A stretch of 62,971 bases of DNA, filler included, from Hyphochytrium catenoides (GCA_900088475.1; 15 parts of 15 records of this genome joined end to end with filler, not necessarily neighbours in it); one strand, 5' to 3'; positions 27,872-47,701 are shown, numbered from the whole stretch's first letter. The notes: generated by a model not told the origin, from the letters alone. Numbers and translations are program-made.

Positions 27872-29257
27872 TTCGCTCTCGTTCGCTCTCTCGCGCGCGC
27901 TCTCGTTCTCTCTCTCTCTCGTTCTCTCTCTCTGTTCCTCTCTCTCTCCCTCCCCCTCTCTCTGTTCCTCGCTCTGTCCCTCTCTCTCTCTCTCACACTC
28001 TCTCTCTCTCTCTTTCTCTCTCCTCTCTCCTCTCTCTCTCTTCTTGGCCTGTCCTTGTCCTTTTCCCTGGTTCCACTGCTCAGTCATAGTCTGCTCGACA
28101 CTACTAGAGACCCTCGCCATCCTACACTCCGCTGTCAGCCTTCTGGACATCCGGTCCGTGTGGTTGCACTTCTCTTGCACTAAGGTCTGCGCTGTCATTT
28201 ATTAGGAGGAAAAAAGCGTCACCGTCCCTAGGCCTCTCGTCACTCTGTCTTGCATCTGTTATGGGAAGAGACTGTGCTTCTCGTACCTCTCCTGGCCACT
28301 CCCCGGCCATCTTGTCTCAGTGGTGACTGGAGAATGACGTTCACTTTCTTCACAAGGTCTACCATTTGTGCGCTCTGTTACACCATTTCCCTCTGAAAGT
28401 CAGCATTACCTTCATACATTTACTTCCAACCGCACATATTTGACTGGGATTCGGATCTAGGCTCGTGCGCAAGAACTCTCGCCAGGAAAAGGGAGAGAGA
28501 GGGAATACTAGAGAACCACTCTTGCCTCTCTTTCCCTGTCTTTCTCTTTTTCTCTCTCTCCCTCCGCCTCTCTCCCTCTGACTTTCTCTTTCGCTGACTA
28601 TCGACTACCGCCTGTCTCCCTCTTCTCCTCCTTTCTCTTGTTTGCACTCTCCTCCACGTCAGTCCAGCCCTTCGACTTGCTTCACCGCCGACGCTCGTGA
28701 CCAGGAAGGGAAAAAATAGACAAAAAGATCTAGTTATGCCTTCTCCTTTGCTTGCCTTTCGCTGAATATATGGATCTTAGCTGAGAGTGCGCTCACTACC
28801 GTTTTACAGTGTAATGTGTTGAAATAGCGCACGTCTTTGACTGGATAAAGACGCAAGCCTCTGGCTTTCTTCCTTTCTCTCTCTCTCTCTNNNNNNNNNN
28901 NNNNNNNNNNNNNNNNNNNNNNNNNNNNNNTCCCTCTCTTTCTCTCTCTCTCTCCCTCTCTCTCTCTTTTCTCTCGCTCGCTGTCTGTCATGGTTTTTCT
29001 CTCCCTCTCTTTCCTCCTCAATTTTCTCGCTTCTATGGATTCCAGCGATCATCTCTTGCTATGTAGGTTGTCTCCCGAGTTATCATCCTTTCTCTTCTCG
29101 TTTCCTTTGGTCTCTAGTCAGGCTCTTGGTCTCACCAACGGCTATCNNNNNNNNNNNNNNNNNNNNNNNNNNNNNNNNNNNNNNNNNNNNTTAATTAATT
29201 AANNNNNNNNNNNNNNNNNNNNNNNNNNNNNNNNNNNNNNNNNNNNCTCCCAACCCT

Positions 29258-29300
<43 letters not shown>

Positions 29301-29355
29301 TTTCTTTTTCTTTCTGTCTCTCTCTCCCCCTGTCTTTTTCCGTCTCTCTCTCTAG

Positions 29356-30087
29356 TTGGCTGGCTGGTTCGAGAAAGCTTTCATAGGAATTGACGGGTCA
29401 GCGGTGACTTATCCTCTCAGCGTCCACTTCAAATCCGTAGAGACAGGACAACTCCTCTGCATTAGGATATCGGAGACTGGACAGGTGTCTCTCTCTTTCT
29501 CTCCCTCTCTGTTTCTCCCTCTCTCTCTCTTTCTCTAAAATATATATATATATATATTCATCTCTCCCGTCGTCTCTCTTCTCTCTCTTTCTCTCTCTTC
29601 TTATTGTCTCGTTGTCATACATATAAAGTCTTGTCTTTTTCCCCAGTTTTTCCTTCTCAAAGTTCCTCGCTTCAACCTCTTCTCTTCTGGAGATATCTCT
29701 CCCCCTAACTGATTGCGTCTCTGTCTCTCTTCCTCTTCTCTCTGTCTCTCTCCCTCTTCTCTGTCTCTCTCCCTCTTCTCTGTCTCTCTCCCTCTTCTCT
29801 TTTCTCTCCCTCTCTATTTTCTTATTTTGTGCGCGTCTCTCCCTCACTTCTGCATGTTCCCTCTTTTGTCCCTCTTCCCTAGATAAAAATTTTCTGCGAC
29901 GACATGGAGTCTGCTAGTGAAGTCGTACAAGATATGTGCGCTTANNNNNNNNNNNNNNNNNNNNNNNNNNNNNNNNCATCCCCTTTGTCTTTCTTTATCT
30001 ATTTGAGTTCTCTAGAGTGGTTCTCACTTGCTCTTTTCTCTCTTTTGCGATGTAAGTACCTCTTCTTTTCTCTGCTCTCTAGGCCGC

Positions 30088-30120
<33 letters not shown>

Positions 30121-30385
30121 CACTAGTCTCGCCTTTAAGCCTTTTCTTGGGGGTGTTGCTCTCTCTCTCTTAGAGCAGCTTCCTTTTCCCTGCCATCTGA
30201 CGGCTTCCTTTTACTTTCTCTTTTTCTCTCTCCCTTTCTCTCTTCTAAACGCCTTTGGTGTCTCTCTCGTGGCTTGTCTAGGTTCAAGAACTTGAATCCC
30301 TCGCTGACTTCCCGAAAGAGATGCAGGCGCTGGAGGAGCTGCTGATGAGGGTGAGCGCTGAGAGAATGTAGAGGAGGCACTGGAC

Positions 30386-30426
<41 letters not shown>

Positions 30427-30571
30427 AATAGAATAGATAACTATCGTTCTCTCTCTCACACGGTTCTCACCTGTGGACACAAAGGTTCTCTTCTCTTTCG
30501 CCTAACCGTTTCTACGTCTTCCGACTCTTCAATCTCTTGTTATCCCTCTCTCTTTGTCTGACTCTGTGTCT

Positions 30572-30602
<31 letters not shown>

Positions 30603-31399
30603 CCTTCCCTTTCTCTTTCTCTCAGGTGGATGAGTTTAACGCTGCTCGTCTTAAAATGTCTGCGGAGATGGCGGACAACTCACAGCTTGTCAAGAGCTTG
30701 GTGGTCAAAGCAGAAGACTCCAGAATACTCGGAGACATGTAAAGTCTCTCTCTCTCTCTCTCTGTCTTTCACATAAAGACGTACATACTCTCTCCTCCTC
30801 TGACTCGTTATGTTTCTCCTTCTCTCTTTCTCCTGTTCCCTCGTTACCTTTTCTCCACTCTTGCCTGGTCACACACACTCTCTCTCTCTCTCTCTTCTCG
30901 CTCCTTCCCTCTACTCTCCTCCCTCTCCATCTCCCCTTCTTTCTTCTCCATATATATCCAACCCGTCCACTGTTTCTCTGTCTATCTTTCCTTATAGCCC
31001 TCGGGAGAGGAGCTTTCAACCTCTTTCTCTCTCGCTCTCCTCTCTGTCTCTTCTCCTTCCGTCTCGCCTTTTCTCTCCCTTCCATCCATGTGTGTCTTTT
31101 CTCTCTTCCGATTACCCCCATTCCTCTTTAATTTGCCTCCAGCTCCTCTCTGTCTCTCTTTTTCTCTCTCTCGTCTTTCTTTCTCCCTCTCTTTTCTCTC
31201 TCTCCCTCTCACCCTCTCCCTCTTTCTCTTCCGTGCACCCTCTCTCTTCTTCTTACTGCCCCCTCCCGCTCGTCTTTCTCTATTTTCTCTCTCTCCCTCT
31301 CTCTGTTCTCTCTCTCTCGCTTTCTCCTCCGCGCACCTCTCTCTCTCTCTCTCTCNNNNNNNNNNNNNNNNNNNNNNNNNNNNNNNNNNNNNNNNNNNN

Positions 31400-45407: not shown

Positions 45408-45451
<44 letters not shown>

Positions 45452-45525
45452 GTCTCTCTGTCTCTCTGTCTCGGTCTCTCTCTGTCTCTCTTTCTCATTC
45501 TCTCTCTCTCTCTCGCGCGCGCGCC

Positions 45526-45556
<31 letters not shown>

Positions 45557-45914
45557 CCTCTCTCTCTCTCTCTCTCGCGCGCGCGCTCTCTCTCTCGCTC
45601 TCTCTCTCTCGCTCTCTCCCTCTCGCTCGTTCTCTCTCGCTCGCTCGCTCTCCATCTTTCGTCCTCACGCTGGCTGTTCAAAGGATTGCCGCGTGGATAG
45701 CTCGGCCAAGTTGAAGATAGAGGAGACAAGCAAAGAGAGAGAGAGAGAGGAGAGGCAAGACGAGGTCGTGAGAGGGAAAGAGAGAGAAAGAGAGAGAAAG
45801 ACGGGCCTAAGGAAATGGTATAGTCTTGGCTTTTGACGACGCTGCAACCACTCTCTCCTCACAAAGACACTTTCCAGCTGTGCAGACAAGGGAGACGATT
45901 AGGAGAGAGCAAGC

Positions 45915-45958
<44 letters not shown>

Positions 45959-46306
45959 CAGAGAGACAGAGAGACAGAGAGAGAGGCAGAGAGAGAGAGA
46001 GAGAGACAGAGAGAGACAGAGAGAGAGACAGAGAGAGAGAAGAGAGATAGCACAAGATCAAGGTCTTCGGGATCACAAAGGGGGCCCGAAAGGAGCGGGA
46101 CCAGTAAGACCGAGAGAGAGAGAGAGAACTAAAAGAGAGTGAGTGAGAGAGAGAGAGAGAGCGTCGACAATCGAGGCGAGAGAAGAAAGCGATATGACGA
46201 ACTCTTTTAATGGACGGAGCTGCAGAAAGCGGGGAAGAGTTTTTCTGCTGCTTTCTCTCTTAGTGATCTCTGTTTCTTGCGGATTGTTAGCAGTAGCTCA
46301 GGTCTG

Positions 46307-47270
46307 ATGGCCATTTCTCTCTATGTTCTCTCTCTCTCTCTCTCTCTCTCTCATTTGTCTTGTCTCTTTGTTCCTCTCCGTAATCTTACTCATGCTGTGT
46401 GCGCTCTTTATCTGTGCCTCTCTCCTTCCCTTTCGCTGACTTTTTCTGCTCAAACACACACACACACACTCTCTCTGTCTCTCTCTGCCTCTCTCTCTCT
46501 CTCTTTCTCTCTCTCTCTGTCTCCCTCTCTCCTTCCTCACCCTCAGGCTGTTGAGATAGAAGCTACGGAGGAATGGCAAGAAGTGCTGCCGGGCCAGTCT
46601 ATCCCTAAGGTTTCCTTTCGCGAATTTCTCTCTCTCTCTCTTCTATCTTCTCTCCTCTCTCTCTTCACCGTTTTTCTCTCTCTCTCTCTCACCACACACA
46701 CTCTTACTCTCTCTCTTTGTCTCTCTCTCTCTTTCCTTACGCACCTCCCAGGGTCTGCATGTTAGAATGGATCTCTCTACAGGAAAGACCTACGCTAAGC
46801 TTCTCACAAAAGAGAGAGAGGAAAAGGAAGAGGACTCTGTCTCTCTCCAATCCATAGAAATAACCCCAAAGGGACAGCAGCTCGTGCTAAAAGAGGAAGA
46901 AGAGAACACGTCTCTCTCTCTCTCCCCGCACTCAGAACTGGAGGTTCGCAAAGAAAAAGAAGAAAAGAGAGAAGAAGCGATAAGCGTAATGGAAAAGGTT
47001 CTTCTTTCTCTCCCTTCGGAGGGAGAAGGAGAAGGAGAGAGAGAGGGAGAGAGAGAGAGAAAAGGCGCAACCATTAGCGGAAAGGCTCTGGAGCAGCTGA
47101 AGCGAAGTCTCTCTCCTGAAAAGTTTCAACAACTTCTGGAAAAGCTTTGGACCGACCGACAGCAGCTCCTGCAGCAGGCCATGGATTCCATGAGGGTAAG
47201 AGAAGAGAGAAGAGAGAGACAGAGAGAGAGAGAGAGAAAGAAGTACATGACTTTCGTTAGAGAGAGGTGA
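46307..47270 (+). CDS. Protein with SIL1-type N-terminal motif (ER Hsp70 nucleotide-exchange factor-like); ends uncertain
   Basis: AVEIEATEEWQEVLPGQSIPK|GLHVRMDLSTGKTYAKL matches the SIL1 N-terminal motif. There is a hydrophobic ATG-started leader at 46307. The gene may splice onward at GTAAG ~47196 rather than stop at 47270. Confidence 0.7.
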
Positions 47271-47668
47271 AAAGGGAGGACATGACAAACGAGGAGGGAG
47301 AGAAGGGAAAGAGAGAGAGAGGAGACACACAGAGGAAAAGAGAGTGCAATAGAGCTTTTCCCACGTCTTTTACTGTTCCTGTGGCTCTCTCTCTCTTCCT
47401 CTTCACAAACTCCTCTCCCTTTTTCTTTCTCTTTATGCCTCTGACACAATCTTCTCTAATTTCTCTCCCTCTGTGTGTCTCTCACGCTTTTCCTCCTCTC
47501 TCTTCTGTTTCTCCATGCTTCCTTTCTCCTGGATATCTCTCTTCTCTCTCCTTTCTTCGCCCGCTGTTCTCTGCTTATGTTTCTCTCTCTCTCTTTCTCT
47601 CTCTGTTTGTCTTTATATCTATCTCTTTTTCTCTCTCACTCTGCCCCCCTTTTCTCCTCTCTCTTTTC

Positions 47669-47701
<33 letters not shown>

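What the first reader, a model, noticed from the sequence alone, without database searches (positions are those of the whole stretch)
29247..47701. Strand-polarised microsatellite pattern: introns are (CT)n, exon insertions and UTRs are (GA)n on the sense strand
Seen: BBS2 (+) introns are CT on the + strand. BPHL, TCF25, CC2D2A and Ariadne (all -) have introns that are GA on +, meaning CT on the sense strand. Polarity flips right after stops: the BBS2 3' flank (~32225-32600) is GA on +, and the convergent BPHL 3' flank (~32630-33040) is CT on +. Low-complexity exonic segments are mostly GA on sense. Exceptions exist, such as GA after the possible SIL1 donor and CT inside Leu/Ser-coding stretches. 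Established: SR/Tra2 proteins bind GA-rich exonic enhancers, and PTB/U2AF65 bind CU-rich RNA. Inference: one dinucleotide repeat read in two orientations may act as a gene-wide binary exon/intron definition signal. This is the best candidate here for an undescribed system.
Basis: partly seen in the sequence, partly recalled or inferred. Interest (0 to 1): 0.75.

Follow-up and report, generated by a model that had tools for sequence, protein, structure and literature searches.

The report
Pyrimidine-filled introns, purine-rich gene tails

Summary
The compositional observation is real. GA/AG/CT/TC make up 48% of all dinucleotides. 5.3 kb lies in pure purine or pure pyrimidine runs of at least 15 nt, against about 9 nt in shuffles. 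The 211 runs form only 35 same-polarity blocks, against 106 ± 7 expected.

Exons of four genes were placed by homology: BBS2 (+), a BPHL-like hydrolase (-), TCF25 (-) and a SIL1-like gene (+). On these models, 21 of 25 introns are pyrimidine-rich on the sense strand, typically 78-93% (binomial p = 0.0009; polarity follows gene strand, Fisher p = 0.0005). All three 3' flanks are GA-rich on sense.

The "binary code" half fails.
- 79% of exon bases are ordinary mixed sequence.
- Exonic (GA)n and (CT)n are about equal (160-259 nt against 140 nt).
- Two homology-bracketed TCF25 introns are about 80% purine on sense.
- Four introns start GA-rich and end CT-rich.
- Purine-rich sense windows inside genes are 64% intronic.
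- Two of three 5' flanks are CT on sense.

AG is not specifically avoided. The flip at 3' flanks argues against a transcription-coupled mutation bias.

Best reading: GA·CT low-complexity expansion whose orientation is set by splicing signals. The closest known cases are Physarum's repeat-filled introns and the teleost AC/GT repeat introns. Function is untested and the organism was not identified.

The parts
29247..32105 (+). BBS2 3' part. Exons about 29356-29484, 29883-29944 (runs into a gap), 30282-30350, 30626-30738. The introns between them are 78-93% pyrimidine on sense. The exception is 30351-30625: its first 50 nt after the donor consensus are 16% Y and its last 50 nt are 98% Y.
   Evidence: Pfam BBS2_pf 72-91 and BBS2_hp 15-51; composition
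32106..32225 (+). Last BBS2 exon, with the stop codon at 32223-32225.
   Evidence: Pfam BBS2_CtH 1-26, E = 3.5e-12
32226..32625 (+). BBS2 3' flank, purine-rich on sense (23% Y; (GA)n 85 nt, (CT)n 0 nt). AATAAA at 32543-32548.
32641..33040 (-). Hydrolase 3' flank, purine-rich on its own sense strand (29% Y; (GA)n 92 nt, (CT)n 8 nt).
33041..36061 (-). BPHL-like alpha/beta hydrolase gene. Exons about 33041-33247, 33895-34001, 34357-34417, 34614-34631 (uncertain micro-exon), 34725-34823, 35266-35447, 35788-36061. Five of six introns are 81-85% Y on sense. Intron 34418-34613 (contains a gap) starts GA-rich.
   Evidence: PDB 2ocg valacyclovir hydrolase, E = 7.6e-8; Pfam Abhydrolase_1; composition
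36062..36461 (-). Stretch upstream of the hydrolase start codon, CT-rich on sense (76% Y; (CT)n 87 nt). This is an exception to 'UTRs are GA', unless it is a 5'-UTR intron.
37775..38174 (-). TCF25 3' flank, moderately purine-rich on sense (36% Y; (GA)n 74 nt, (CT)n 0 nt).
38175..44578 (-). TCF25 gene. Exons about 38175-38386, 38647-38791, 39527-39658, 40037-40149, 40595-40878, 41407-41533, 41983-42126, 42543-42720, (43047-43191), 43407-43614, 43975-44132, 44428-44578. The start codon was not found. Eight of 11 introns are 78-85% Y on sense.
   Evidence: tblastn with oomycete and other TCF25 proteins; Pfam Tcf25; composition
41534..41982 (-). TCF25 intron that is 82% purine on sense (GA-rich). 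The donor is hidden in gap 41858-41980. The 3' end reads CTGAC...TTATCAG.
   Evidence: Flanking exons match Pfam Tcf25 positions 11-58 and 61-109; in-frame stop at 41626-41628; composition
43615..43974 (-). Second TCF25 intron that is purine-rich on sense (24% Y). Donor GTAGCT. The last 50 nt are 66% Y.
   Evidence: The open frame ends at 43974; composition. Its exon/intron status rests on the ORF and splice sites only.
43047..43191 (-). Putative GA-repeat coding exon (Arg/Glu-rich, 8% Y) flanked by ...GGCAG| and |GTGAAT. It contains gap 43167-43185.
   Evidence: Sequence reading. It is unproven: the only support is about 24 unaccounted residues in the homologue alignments.
40652..40687 (-). 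Verified exonic GA insertion (codes EREETREREERERKERNE) inside a conserved TCF25 exon. The segment holds no GT, so it cannot be a GT-AG intron.
   Evidence: Pfam Tcf25 110-182 spans it; sequence
42721..43046 (-). Intron with a GA-rich 5' two-thirds and a CT-rich 3' third (last 50 nt 98% Y).
   Evidence: folding z = -1.1
45795..46194 (+). Stretch upstream of the SIL1-like start codon, GA-rich on sense (23% Y; (GA)n 126 nt).
46195..47701 (+). SIL1-like gene 5' part. Exons 46195-46301 (signal-peptide-like), 46547-46609, 46752-47195. Introns 1 and 2 are 82-86% Y. Intron 3 (47196 to the piece edge) starts with about 130 nt of GA and then turns CT.
   Evidence: ORFs and splice sites. SIL1 identity was not confirmed.

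Best explanation
The genome carries a very heavy load of GA·CT (purine·pyrimidine) low-complexity sequence, generated by slippage-type expansion. Inside transcription units the orientation of that sequence is not free.

The part that is spliced out is overwhelmingly pyrimidine (CU)-rich on the pre-mRNA, from just after the donor to the acceptor. Purine (GA)-rich tracts are found in three places: parts that stay in the mRNA (3' flanks, some coding insertions), the 5' portions of some introns, and a minority of whole introns.

The most likely cause is splicing-related orientation filtering and seeding. The polypyrimidine tract at the 3' splice site and the purine-rich +3 to +8 region of donors (GTAAGAG, GTGAGNG) act as seeds. 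Long CU tracts are tolerated, or favoured, only where U2AF/PTB-type pyrimidine-binding proteins are meant to act. Long CU tracts followed by AG in mature-mRNA regions would be read as 3' splice sites.

The result is a strong one-sided mark (CU-rich means intron) rather than a two-state code. Exons are recognised mainly by being ordinary mixed sequence.

Shown: the composition, its link to gene strand, and the exceptions. Inferred: the selective or seeding mechanism.
For: - 48% of dinucleotides are GA/AG/CT/TC.
- 5325 nt lie in pure R or Y runs of at least 15 nt, against about 9 nt in shuffles. These form 35 polarity blocks against 106 ± 7 expected.
- 21 of 25 introns are Y-rich on sense, p = 0.0009. 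Polarity on the + strand follows gene strand, Fisher p = 0.0005.
- Intronic (CT)n covers 1996 nt against 284 nt for (GA)n, out of 9523 nt.
- The last 50 nt of introns average 84% Y and are at least 66% Y in 24 of 25. The GA-rich parts sit at intron 5' ends.
- 3' flanks of all three genes with a stop in the piece are 23-36% Y on sense, opposite to the introns of the same transcription unit. This fits an RNA-level cause and not a strand-wide mutation bias.
- 77% of intron bases against 6% of exon bases lie in windows with at least 70% Y.
[quoted passage not shown] One Physarum gene holds a 994-nt intron that is 94% A/G and another intron that is 92% C/T (PMC2258281).
Against: - Only four genes in 18 kb were available, and no transcript data. 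Exon/intron calls rest on homology, ORFs and GT-AG sites.
- Two introns are purine-rich on sense throughout.
- An exonic (CT)8...CAG at 46911-46935 seems tolerated.
- Two of three 5' flanks are CT on sense.
- AG is not specifically depleted in the Y-rich introns (AG 83, GA 78; A 8.2%, G 8.5%). The simplest 'avoid cryptic acceptors' form of selection is therefore not visible.
- A purely neutral seeded-slippage process could give much of the same picture.
Confidence: 0.55

Rival explanations
1. (CU)n and (GA)n are an active, gene-wide binary code: CU tracts recruit PTB/U2AF-type proteins to mark introns, and GA tracts recruit SR/Tra2-type proteins to mark exons and UTRs.
For: Sense Y-richness separates introns from exons well. 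There are verified GA coding insertions, such as 40652-40687 inside a Pfam-spanned TCF25 exon. 3' flanks are GA-rich. A GA-only putative exon at 43047-43191 has proper flanking splice sites.
Against: - 79% of exon bases are in mixed-composition windows, and 18 of 27 exons lack even (GA)4.
- Exonic (GA)n is about equal to (CT)n without the unproven exon.
- R-rich sense windows in gene bodies are 64% intronic.
- Introns 41534-41982 and 43615-43974 are about 80% purine on sense.
- Two of three 5' flanks are CT on sense.
Confidence: 0.15
2. Neutral seeded slippage without selection on orientation. Pre-existing short seeds simply expand in a genome with very high GA·CT slippage. The seeds are the polypyrimidine tract at intron 3' ends, AGAG after donors, and GAR/AGR codons in exons.
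For: GA parts sit right after donors of the type GTAAGAG or GTGAGCGCTGAGAG, and CT parts run into acceptors. A and G are equally depleted and there is no AG-specific avoidance. Tracts are degenerate, and minisatellites of 19-127 bp periods have formed from them.
Against: It does not explain why about 400 nt after each of three stop codons is GA-rich on sense, nor why most introns are CT-rich from position +5 on, next to the donor.
Confidence: 0.2
3. Transcription-coupled mutation or repair asymmetry makes the non-template strand pyrimidine-rich.
For: Polarity follows gene strand for four genes on both strands.
Against: - Polarity reverses within single transcription units: at 3' flanks, in the 5' parts of four introns, and in two whole introns.
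- Coding exons are unaffected.
- The size of the skew (84% Y) is far beyond known transcription-associated skews (established knowledge, not tested here).
Confidence: 0.03
4. For the subset of introns with GA at the 5' end and CU at the 3' end, the complementary tracts pair and bridge the splice sites. This would be like the (AC)m-(GT)n introns of teleosts.
For: Intron 30351-30625 folds into one long GA:CU stem that joins its ends (-105 kcal/mol, z = -3.4). 47196-47701 does the same (z = -4.1). Rfam's only sub-threshold hits are hairpin models sitting on GA-to-CT junctions. Teleost precedent: PMC4691745.
Against: Only 4 of 25 introns have this layout. Intron 42721-43046 is no better than shuffles (z = -1.1). 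Any GA block next to a CU block must pair in silico. 47196-47701 is cut by the piece edge.
Confidence: 0.1

Closest known systems
Physarum polycephalum repeat-filled introns (PMC4758236, PMC2258281). From my own memory and not retrieved here: Trzcinska-Danielewicz & Fronk 2000, Nucleic Acids Res 28:3411, which as I recall reports a pyrimidine preference on the coding strand along the whole intron.
   Same: Introns consist largely of long purine-only or pyrimidine-only simple repeats flanked by ordinary GT-AG signals. Pyrimidine-rich is the commoner orientation. Purine-rich and pyrimidine-rich introns coexist in one gene. The tracts break assemblies.
   Different: Physarum introns listed in the paper's supplement are A+T-rich, of the CTTTT or GAAAAG type. 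Here they are (CT)n/(GA)n at about 50% G+C. A purine-rich 3' flank is not described in the texts I could read. The best TCF25 matches here are oomycete proteins at 33-56% identity, so the organism is unidentified and probably not Physarum.
Teleost (AC)m-(GT)n intron-bridging repeats (Lin et al. 2016, PMC4691745)
   Same: Dinucleotide microsatellites inside introns, strand-specific, complementary at opposite intron ends, and proposed or shown to act in splice-site pairing.
   Different: There the two repeats always come as a complementary pair at the two intron ends. Here most introns are CT from end to end, and only 4 of 25 have a 5' GA block. No functional data exist here.
Canonical polypyrimidine tract with U2AF65/PTB recognition, and purine-rich (GAR) exonic splicing enhancers
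   Same: Pyrimidines upstream of the acceptor AG, and purine-rich low complexity in some exons.
   Different: The pyrimidine bias here covers whole introns of 100-1300 nt rather than about 20-40 nt. AG-free zones upstream of acceptors are often above 100 nt. Most exons have no GA tract.

Membership tests
Spliceosomal GT-AG introns with a 3' polypyrimidine tract | GT donor and AG acceptor at the boundaries of homology-placed exons | tested here: met
   All donors and acceptors not hidden by gaps or the piece edge are GT and AG after boundary refinement.
Spliceosomal GT-AG introns with a 3' polypyrimidine tract | Pyrimidine enrichment in the last ~50 nt before the acceptor | tested here: met
   Mean 84% Y, and at least 66% Y in 24 of 25 introns. 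The exception, 41534-41982, has an AG-free CTGAC...CAG end.
   18 of 27 exons lack (GA)4. R-rich sense windows within genes are 64% intronic. Two introns are about 80% purine.
Physarum-type repeat-filled, strand-biased introns | Introns built of long R-only or Y-only repeats between normal splice signals, with pyrimidine on the coding strand prevailing | tested here: met
   In the models, 3930 of 9409 intron nt lie in sense Y runs of at least 12 nt, against 531 nt in R runs. 21 of 25 introns are Y-rich in the refined models.
Physarum-type repeat-filled, strand-biased introns | Source organism is Physarum or a myxomycete | tested here: inconclusive
   The repeat style differs from the published Physarum introns. 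The nearest TCF25 proteins are oomycete. No identical protein is in the collections.
Teleost-type complementary repeat-bridged introns | Complementary dinucleotide repeats at opposite ends of the same intron, forming a stable bridging helix | tested here: inconclusive
   4 of 25 introns have the layout. Folding z = -3.4, -4.1 and -1.1.
Transcription-coupled strand asymmetry | One polarity across the whole transcription unit | tested here: not met
   Polarity reverses in 3' flanks, in the 5' parts of some introns and in two whole introns.
AG-acceptor avoidance as sole cause | AG depleted relative to GA and other purine dinucleotides in introns | tested here: not met
   AG 83 against GA 78, both about 1.5-1.6 times expectation from base frequencies. 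A and G are equally rare.

The most novel reading that the evidence does not exclude
In this organism, intron recognition may rely on coating whole introns with pyrimidine-tract binding proteins on (CU)n. It may be aided in a subset of introns by GA:CU helices that bridge the splice sites. Purine-rich tracts would then be the only form of the genome's rampant GA·CT expansion allowed in mature mRNA and its 3' end. That would be a lineage-wide, microsatellite-based intron-definition system analogous to, but independent of, the teleost AC/GT system.
Probability: 0.15. Interest if true: 0.8.

Novelty: new variant of a known kind. Interest (0 to 1): 0.45.

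Why it matters
If the bias holds genome-wide, three things would follow.
- Gene strand and most intron positions could be read directly from purine/pyrimidine polarity. That is useful for annotating a genome that evidently resists assembly and has no close annotated relatives.
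- The organism would be a natural test of how much of an intron the pyrimidine-binding splicing factors can use.
- It would also be a test of how microsatellite expansion is shaped by RNA processing rather than by DNA-level bias.

As it stands, this is a strong compositional regularity with clear exceptions, not evidence of a new mechanism.

Tried and rejected
- Organism identification failed. A HMMER search of all cluster representatives with the 96-aa TCF25 exon gave at most 60% identity over a 50-residue stretch. The named best hits are oomycetes and chytrids.
- Exact look-up of ten ATG-started ORFs found none in the collection.
- I suspected Physarum from memory. Its published introns are A+T-rich and of a different style, so I do not assign the piece to it.
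- I could not retrieve the 2000 NAR paper on Physarum intron composition. It is cited from memory only.
- Literature searches for CT-rich or pyrimidine-rich introns returned nothing relevant.
- Rfam gave no match at gathering score. The sub-threshold miRNA-like hits are GA:CU hairpin artefacts. No tRNAs were found.
- Pfam gave nothing for ORFs in 36464-37762 and 44778-45396.
- A bacterial promoter/terminator scan is irrelevant to a eukaryote and is disregarded.
- A candidate TCF25 first exon (ATG at 44783-44785) does not join in frame with the next exon, so I dropped it.
- A possible short intron inside SIL1-like exon 3 (46884-46935, 52 nt) would break the frame, so I rejected it.
- Spliced models were never joined.
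- The piece is not human-like, so no restriction applied.

Full report
WHAT THE PIECE IS

Places 29247-47701 hold 18,455 nt, of which 352 are N in six gaps. G+C is 47.5%. The four dinucleotides GA, AG, CT and TC make up 48% of all dinucleotides. Tandem Repeats Finder lists 167 arrays, nearly all period-2 CT or GA or their degenerate derivatives. Pure purine or pure pyrimidine runs of at least 15 nt cover 5,325 nt, against about 9 nt in base shuffles. The 211 runs fall into only 35 blocks of like polarity. Shuffling the labels gives 106 ± 7 blocks, with a minimum of 79 in 10,000 trials. The low complexity and its local polarity are therefore real and far beyond chance.

GENES

I placed exons by homology and never joined them.

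- BBS2 (+). Pfam BBS2 platform positions 72-91 match 29883-29942. BBS2 hairpin positions 15-51 match 30629-30739. The BBS2 C-terminal helix matches 32111-32222.
- An alpha/beta hydrolase (-). The last exon's best solved relative is human valacyclovir hydrolase, BPHL (2ocg, E = 7.6e-8). Abhydrolase_1 matches two further exons.
- TCF25 (-). Pfam Tcf25 positions 11-58, 61-109, 110-182 and 187-221 fall on four successive exons. tblastn with full-length TCF25 proteins places nine exons from 43559 down to 38181. Those proteins came from the all-representatives search.
- A gene on + from 46195. It has a signal-peptide-like first exon and a WQ..PGQ.IP.GLHVRM.L.TG motif that I recall as SIL1-like. Neither Pfam nor PDB confirms SIL1.

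The organism stays unidentified. The nearest TCF25 proteins are oomycete (Aphanomyces, Pythium, Saprolegnia, Albugo, Nothophytophthora) at 33-56% identity per exon. No identical or close protein exists in the collections. The piece is clearly not human.

ASSEMBLY GAPS

- Five of the six abut CT/GA tracts directly, so tract lengths are underestimated.
- 29945-29976 follows an exon that has no donor before the gap.
- 41858-41980 likewise swallows the donor of a TCF25 intron.
- 38549-38639 begins 7 nt after a donor.
- 34430-34472 lies at an intron 3' end.
- 43167-43185 sits inside a putative GA exon, so its frame cannot be known.
- 31356-31399 has (CT)n on both sides. BBS2 hairpin profile positions 52-98 (about 47 residues) are encoded nowhere between 30739 and 32105, so an exon is probably hidden in that gap.

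No claim below depends on reading across a gap.

After exon ends were refined to GT-AG sites, 25 introns or intron parts are defined.

- Twenty-one are pyrimidine-rich on the sense strand, mostly 78-93% (binomial p = 0.0009).
- On the + strand, all 8 introns of the + genes are Y-rich. 13 of 17 introns of the - genes are R-rich (Fisher p = 0.0005).
- Pure (CT)n of at least 4 units covers 1,996 of 9,523 intron nt on sense, against 284 nt of (GA)n.
- The bias starts within a few bases of the donor and runs to the acceptor. The first 50 nt average 72% Y and the last 50 nt average 84% Y.
- AG-free zones before acceptors are often longer than 100 nt.

- After the BBS2 stop, 32226-32625 is 23% Y on sense. 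An AATAAA lies at 32543-32548.
- After the hydrolase stop, 32641-33040 is 29% Y on its own sense strand.
- After the TCF25 stop, 37775-38174 is 36% Y.

In all three, (GA)n covers 74-92 nt and (CT)n 0-8 nt. Polarity therefore flips at the convergent BBS2/hydrolase junction exactly as described.

THE EXON AND UTR HALF IS MUCH WEAKER

- Of 27 exons, 18 have no (GA)4 at all.
- Exonic (GA)n is 160 nt against 140 nt of (CT)n. It reaches 259 nt only if a putative GA-only exon at 43047-43191 is counted. That exon has proper ...CAG| and |GTGAAT flanks but no proof.
- 79% of exon bases lie in windows of mixed composition, 15% in purine-rich windows and 6% in pyrimidine-rich windows.
- There are real GA coding insertions. 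The segment 40652-40687 encodes EREETREREERERKERNE inside an exon that Pfam Tcf25 spans on both sides. It holds no GT, so it cannot be an intron.
- There are also CT coding stretches. One is a (CT)8...CAG at 46911-46935 that looks like a 3' splice site yet cannot be spliced from the nearest GT without breaking the frame.
- Of three 5' flanks, only the SIL1-like one is GA on sense (23% Y). The stretches upstream of the hydrolase start and of TCF25 exon 44428-44578 are CT on sense. These may be 5'-UTR introns.

EXCEPTIONS AMONG INTRONS DECIDE AGAINST A BINARY CODE

- The segment 41534-41982 lies between exons matching Tcf25 profile positions 11-58 and 61-109, so nothing is missing from the protein. 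It carries an in-frame stop at 41626-41628. It is 82% purine on sense and ends in CTGAC...TTATCAG.
- The segment 43615-43974, with donor GTAGCT, is 76% purine.
- Four introns begin with 60-200 nt of GA and end CT-rich: 30351-30625, 34418-34613, 42721-43046 and 47196 onward.
- Inside gene bodies, purine-rich sense windows are 64% intronic.

Pyrimidine-richness on sense marks introns well: about 97% of such bases are intronic. Purine-richness marks nothing reliably.

- AG avoidance. In the 19 strongly Y-rich introns, A (8.2%) and G (8.5%) are equally rare. AG (83) is no rarer than GA (78), and both are about 1.5-1.6 times expectation. The bias is therefore a general purine depletion, not acceptor avoidance.
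- Transcription-coupled mutation. Polarity reverses within single transcription units, at 3' flanks, at intron 5' parts and in two whole introns, while exons are unbiased. A strand-wide mutational skew does not fit.

MOST LIKELY MECHANISM (INFERENCE)

A genome-wide tendency to expand GA·CT low complexity is channelled by RNA processing. The polypyrimidine tract seeds and tolerates CT expansion in introns. The purine-rich region after donors (GTAAGAG, GTGAGNG) seeds GA at intron 5' ends. Regions kept in the mRNA accept mainly the GA orientation, because long CU tracts followed by AG resemble 3' splice sites.

A purely neutral seeding version explains the intron layout but not the GA-rich 3' flanks.

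An extra possibility is splice-site bridging. GA and CU tracts are complementary. Intron 30351-30625 folds into one long stem that joins its ends (z = -3.4), and 47196-47701 does likewise (z = -4.1). Intron 42721-43046 does not beat shuffles (z = -1.1). The only Rfam signals are sub-threshold hairpin-model hits on GA-to-CT junctions. This resembles the teleost (AC)m-(GT)n introns (PMC4691745) but concerns only 4 of 25 introns.

COMPARISON WITH WHAT IS KNOWN

The Physarum genome paper reports long pyrimidine-rich repeat stretches in introns. [quoted passage not shown] The Physarum transcriptome paper describes a 994-nt intron that is 94% A/G and a second intron in the same gene that is 92% C/T (PMC2258281). 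That is the same kind of exception seen here in TCF25.

From memory only, a 2000 NAR paper reported a pyrimidine preference on the coding strand along whole Physarum introns. I could not retrieve it.

The present piece differs in repeat type. It has CT/GA at about 50% G+C, against A+T-rich repeats in Physarum. It also has purine-rich 3' flanks, and it is probably from a different lineage. I therefore file it as a new variant of a known kind.

VERDICT

The binary-code interpretation is not supported. A splicing-linked orientation bias of microsatellite expansion is the best reading (confidence about 0.55). Everything functional remains untested, and 18 kb with four genes cannot speak for the genome.

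Noticed in passing
window 36632-36993: A 60-bp tandem repeat with six copies at 94% identity lies between the hydrolase 5' end and the TCF25 3' end. Non-repetitive ORF-like stretches next to it (36997-37305, minus strand) have no Pfam match.
   Followed up: partly
window 31780-32102: Higher-order minisatellite with periods of about 30, 94 and 127 bp. Its unit combines (CT)n with TTTGCCCTGATTCCTTACCC. It sits inside the last BBS2 intron.
   Followed up: no
window 30739-32105 (gap 31356-31399): Pfam BBS2 hairpin positions 52-98 (about 47 residues) are encoded nowhere in the assembled sequence between the hairpin exon and the C-terminal exon. An exon is probably lost in the gap, whose true length would then exceed the 44 N written.
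   Followed up: partly
window 45408-45652: Three compound (CT)n(CG)4-6 blocks (alternating CG, potentially Z-DNA-forming) lie in the divergent intergenic region between TCF25 and the SIL1-like gene.
   Followed up: no
window 44800-45400: An island of ordinary, A+T-richer, repeat-free sequence lies upstream of TCF25. It has no Pfam match and no RNA family match. The TCF25 start codon was not found and may lie here.
   Followed up: partly
window 42723-42915, 30383-30601, 47263-47466 and others: All sub-threshold Rfam hits (plant miRNA precursors, snoR125) sit on junctions where a GA block meets a CT block. They reflect GA:CU self-complementarity, not RNA genes.
   Followed up: yes
window 46911-46935: (CT)8CCCCGCACTCAG inside SIL1-like exon 3 codes SLSLSPHS. 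It looks like a strong 3' splice site but cannot be used from the nearest upstream GT (46884) without a frameshift.
   Followed up: partly
window 44346-44402 and 29540-29557: Other microsatellite types are rare: one compound (AC)9(AG)19 and one (AT)9. Almost everything else is CT/GA.
   Followed up: no
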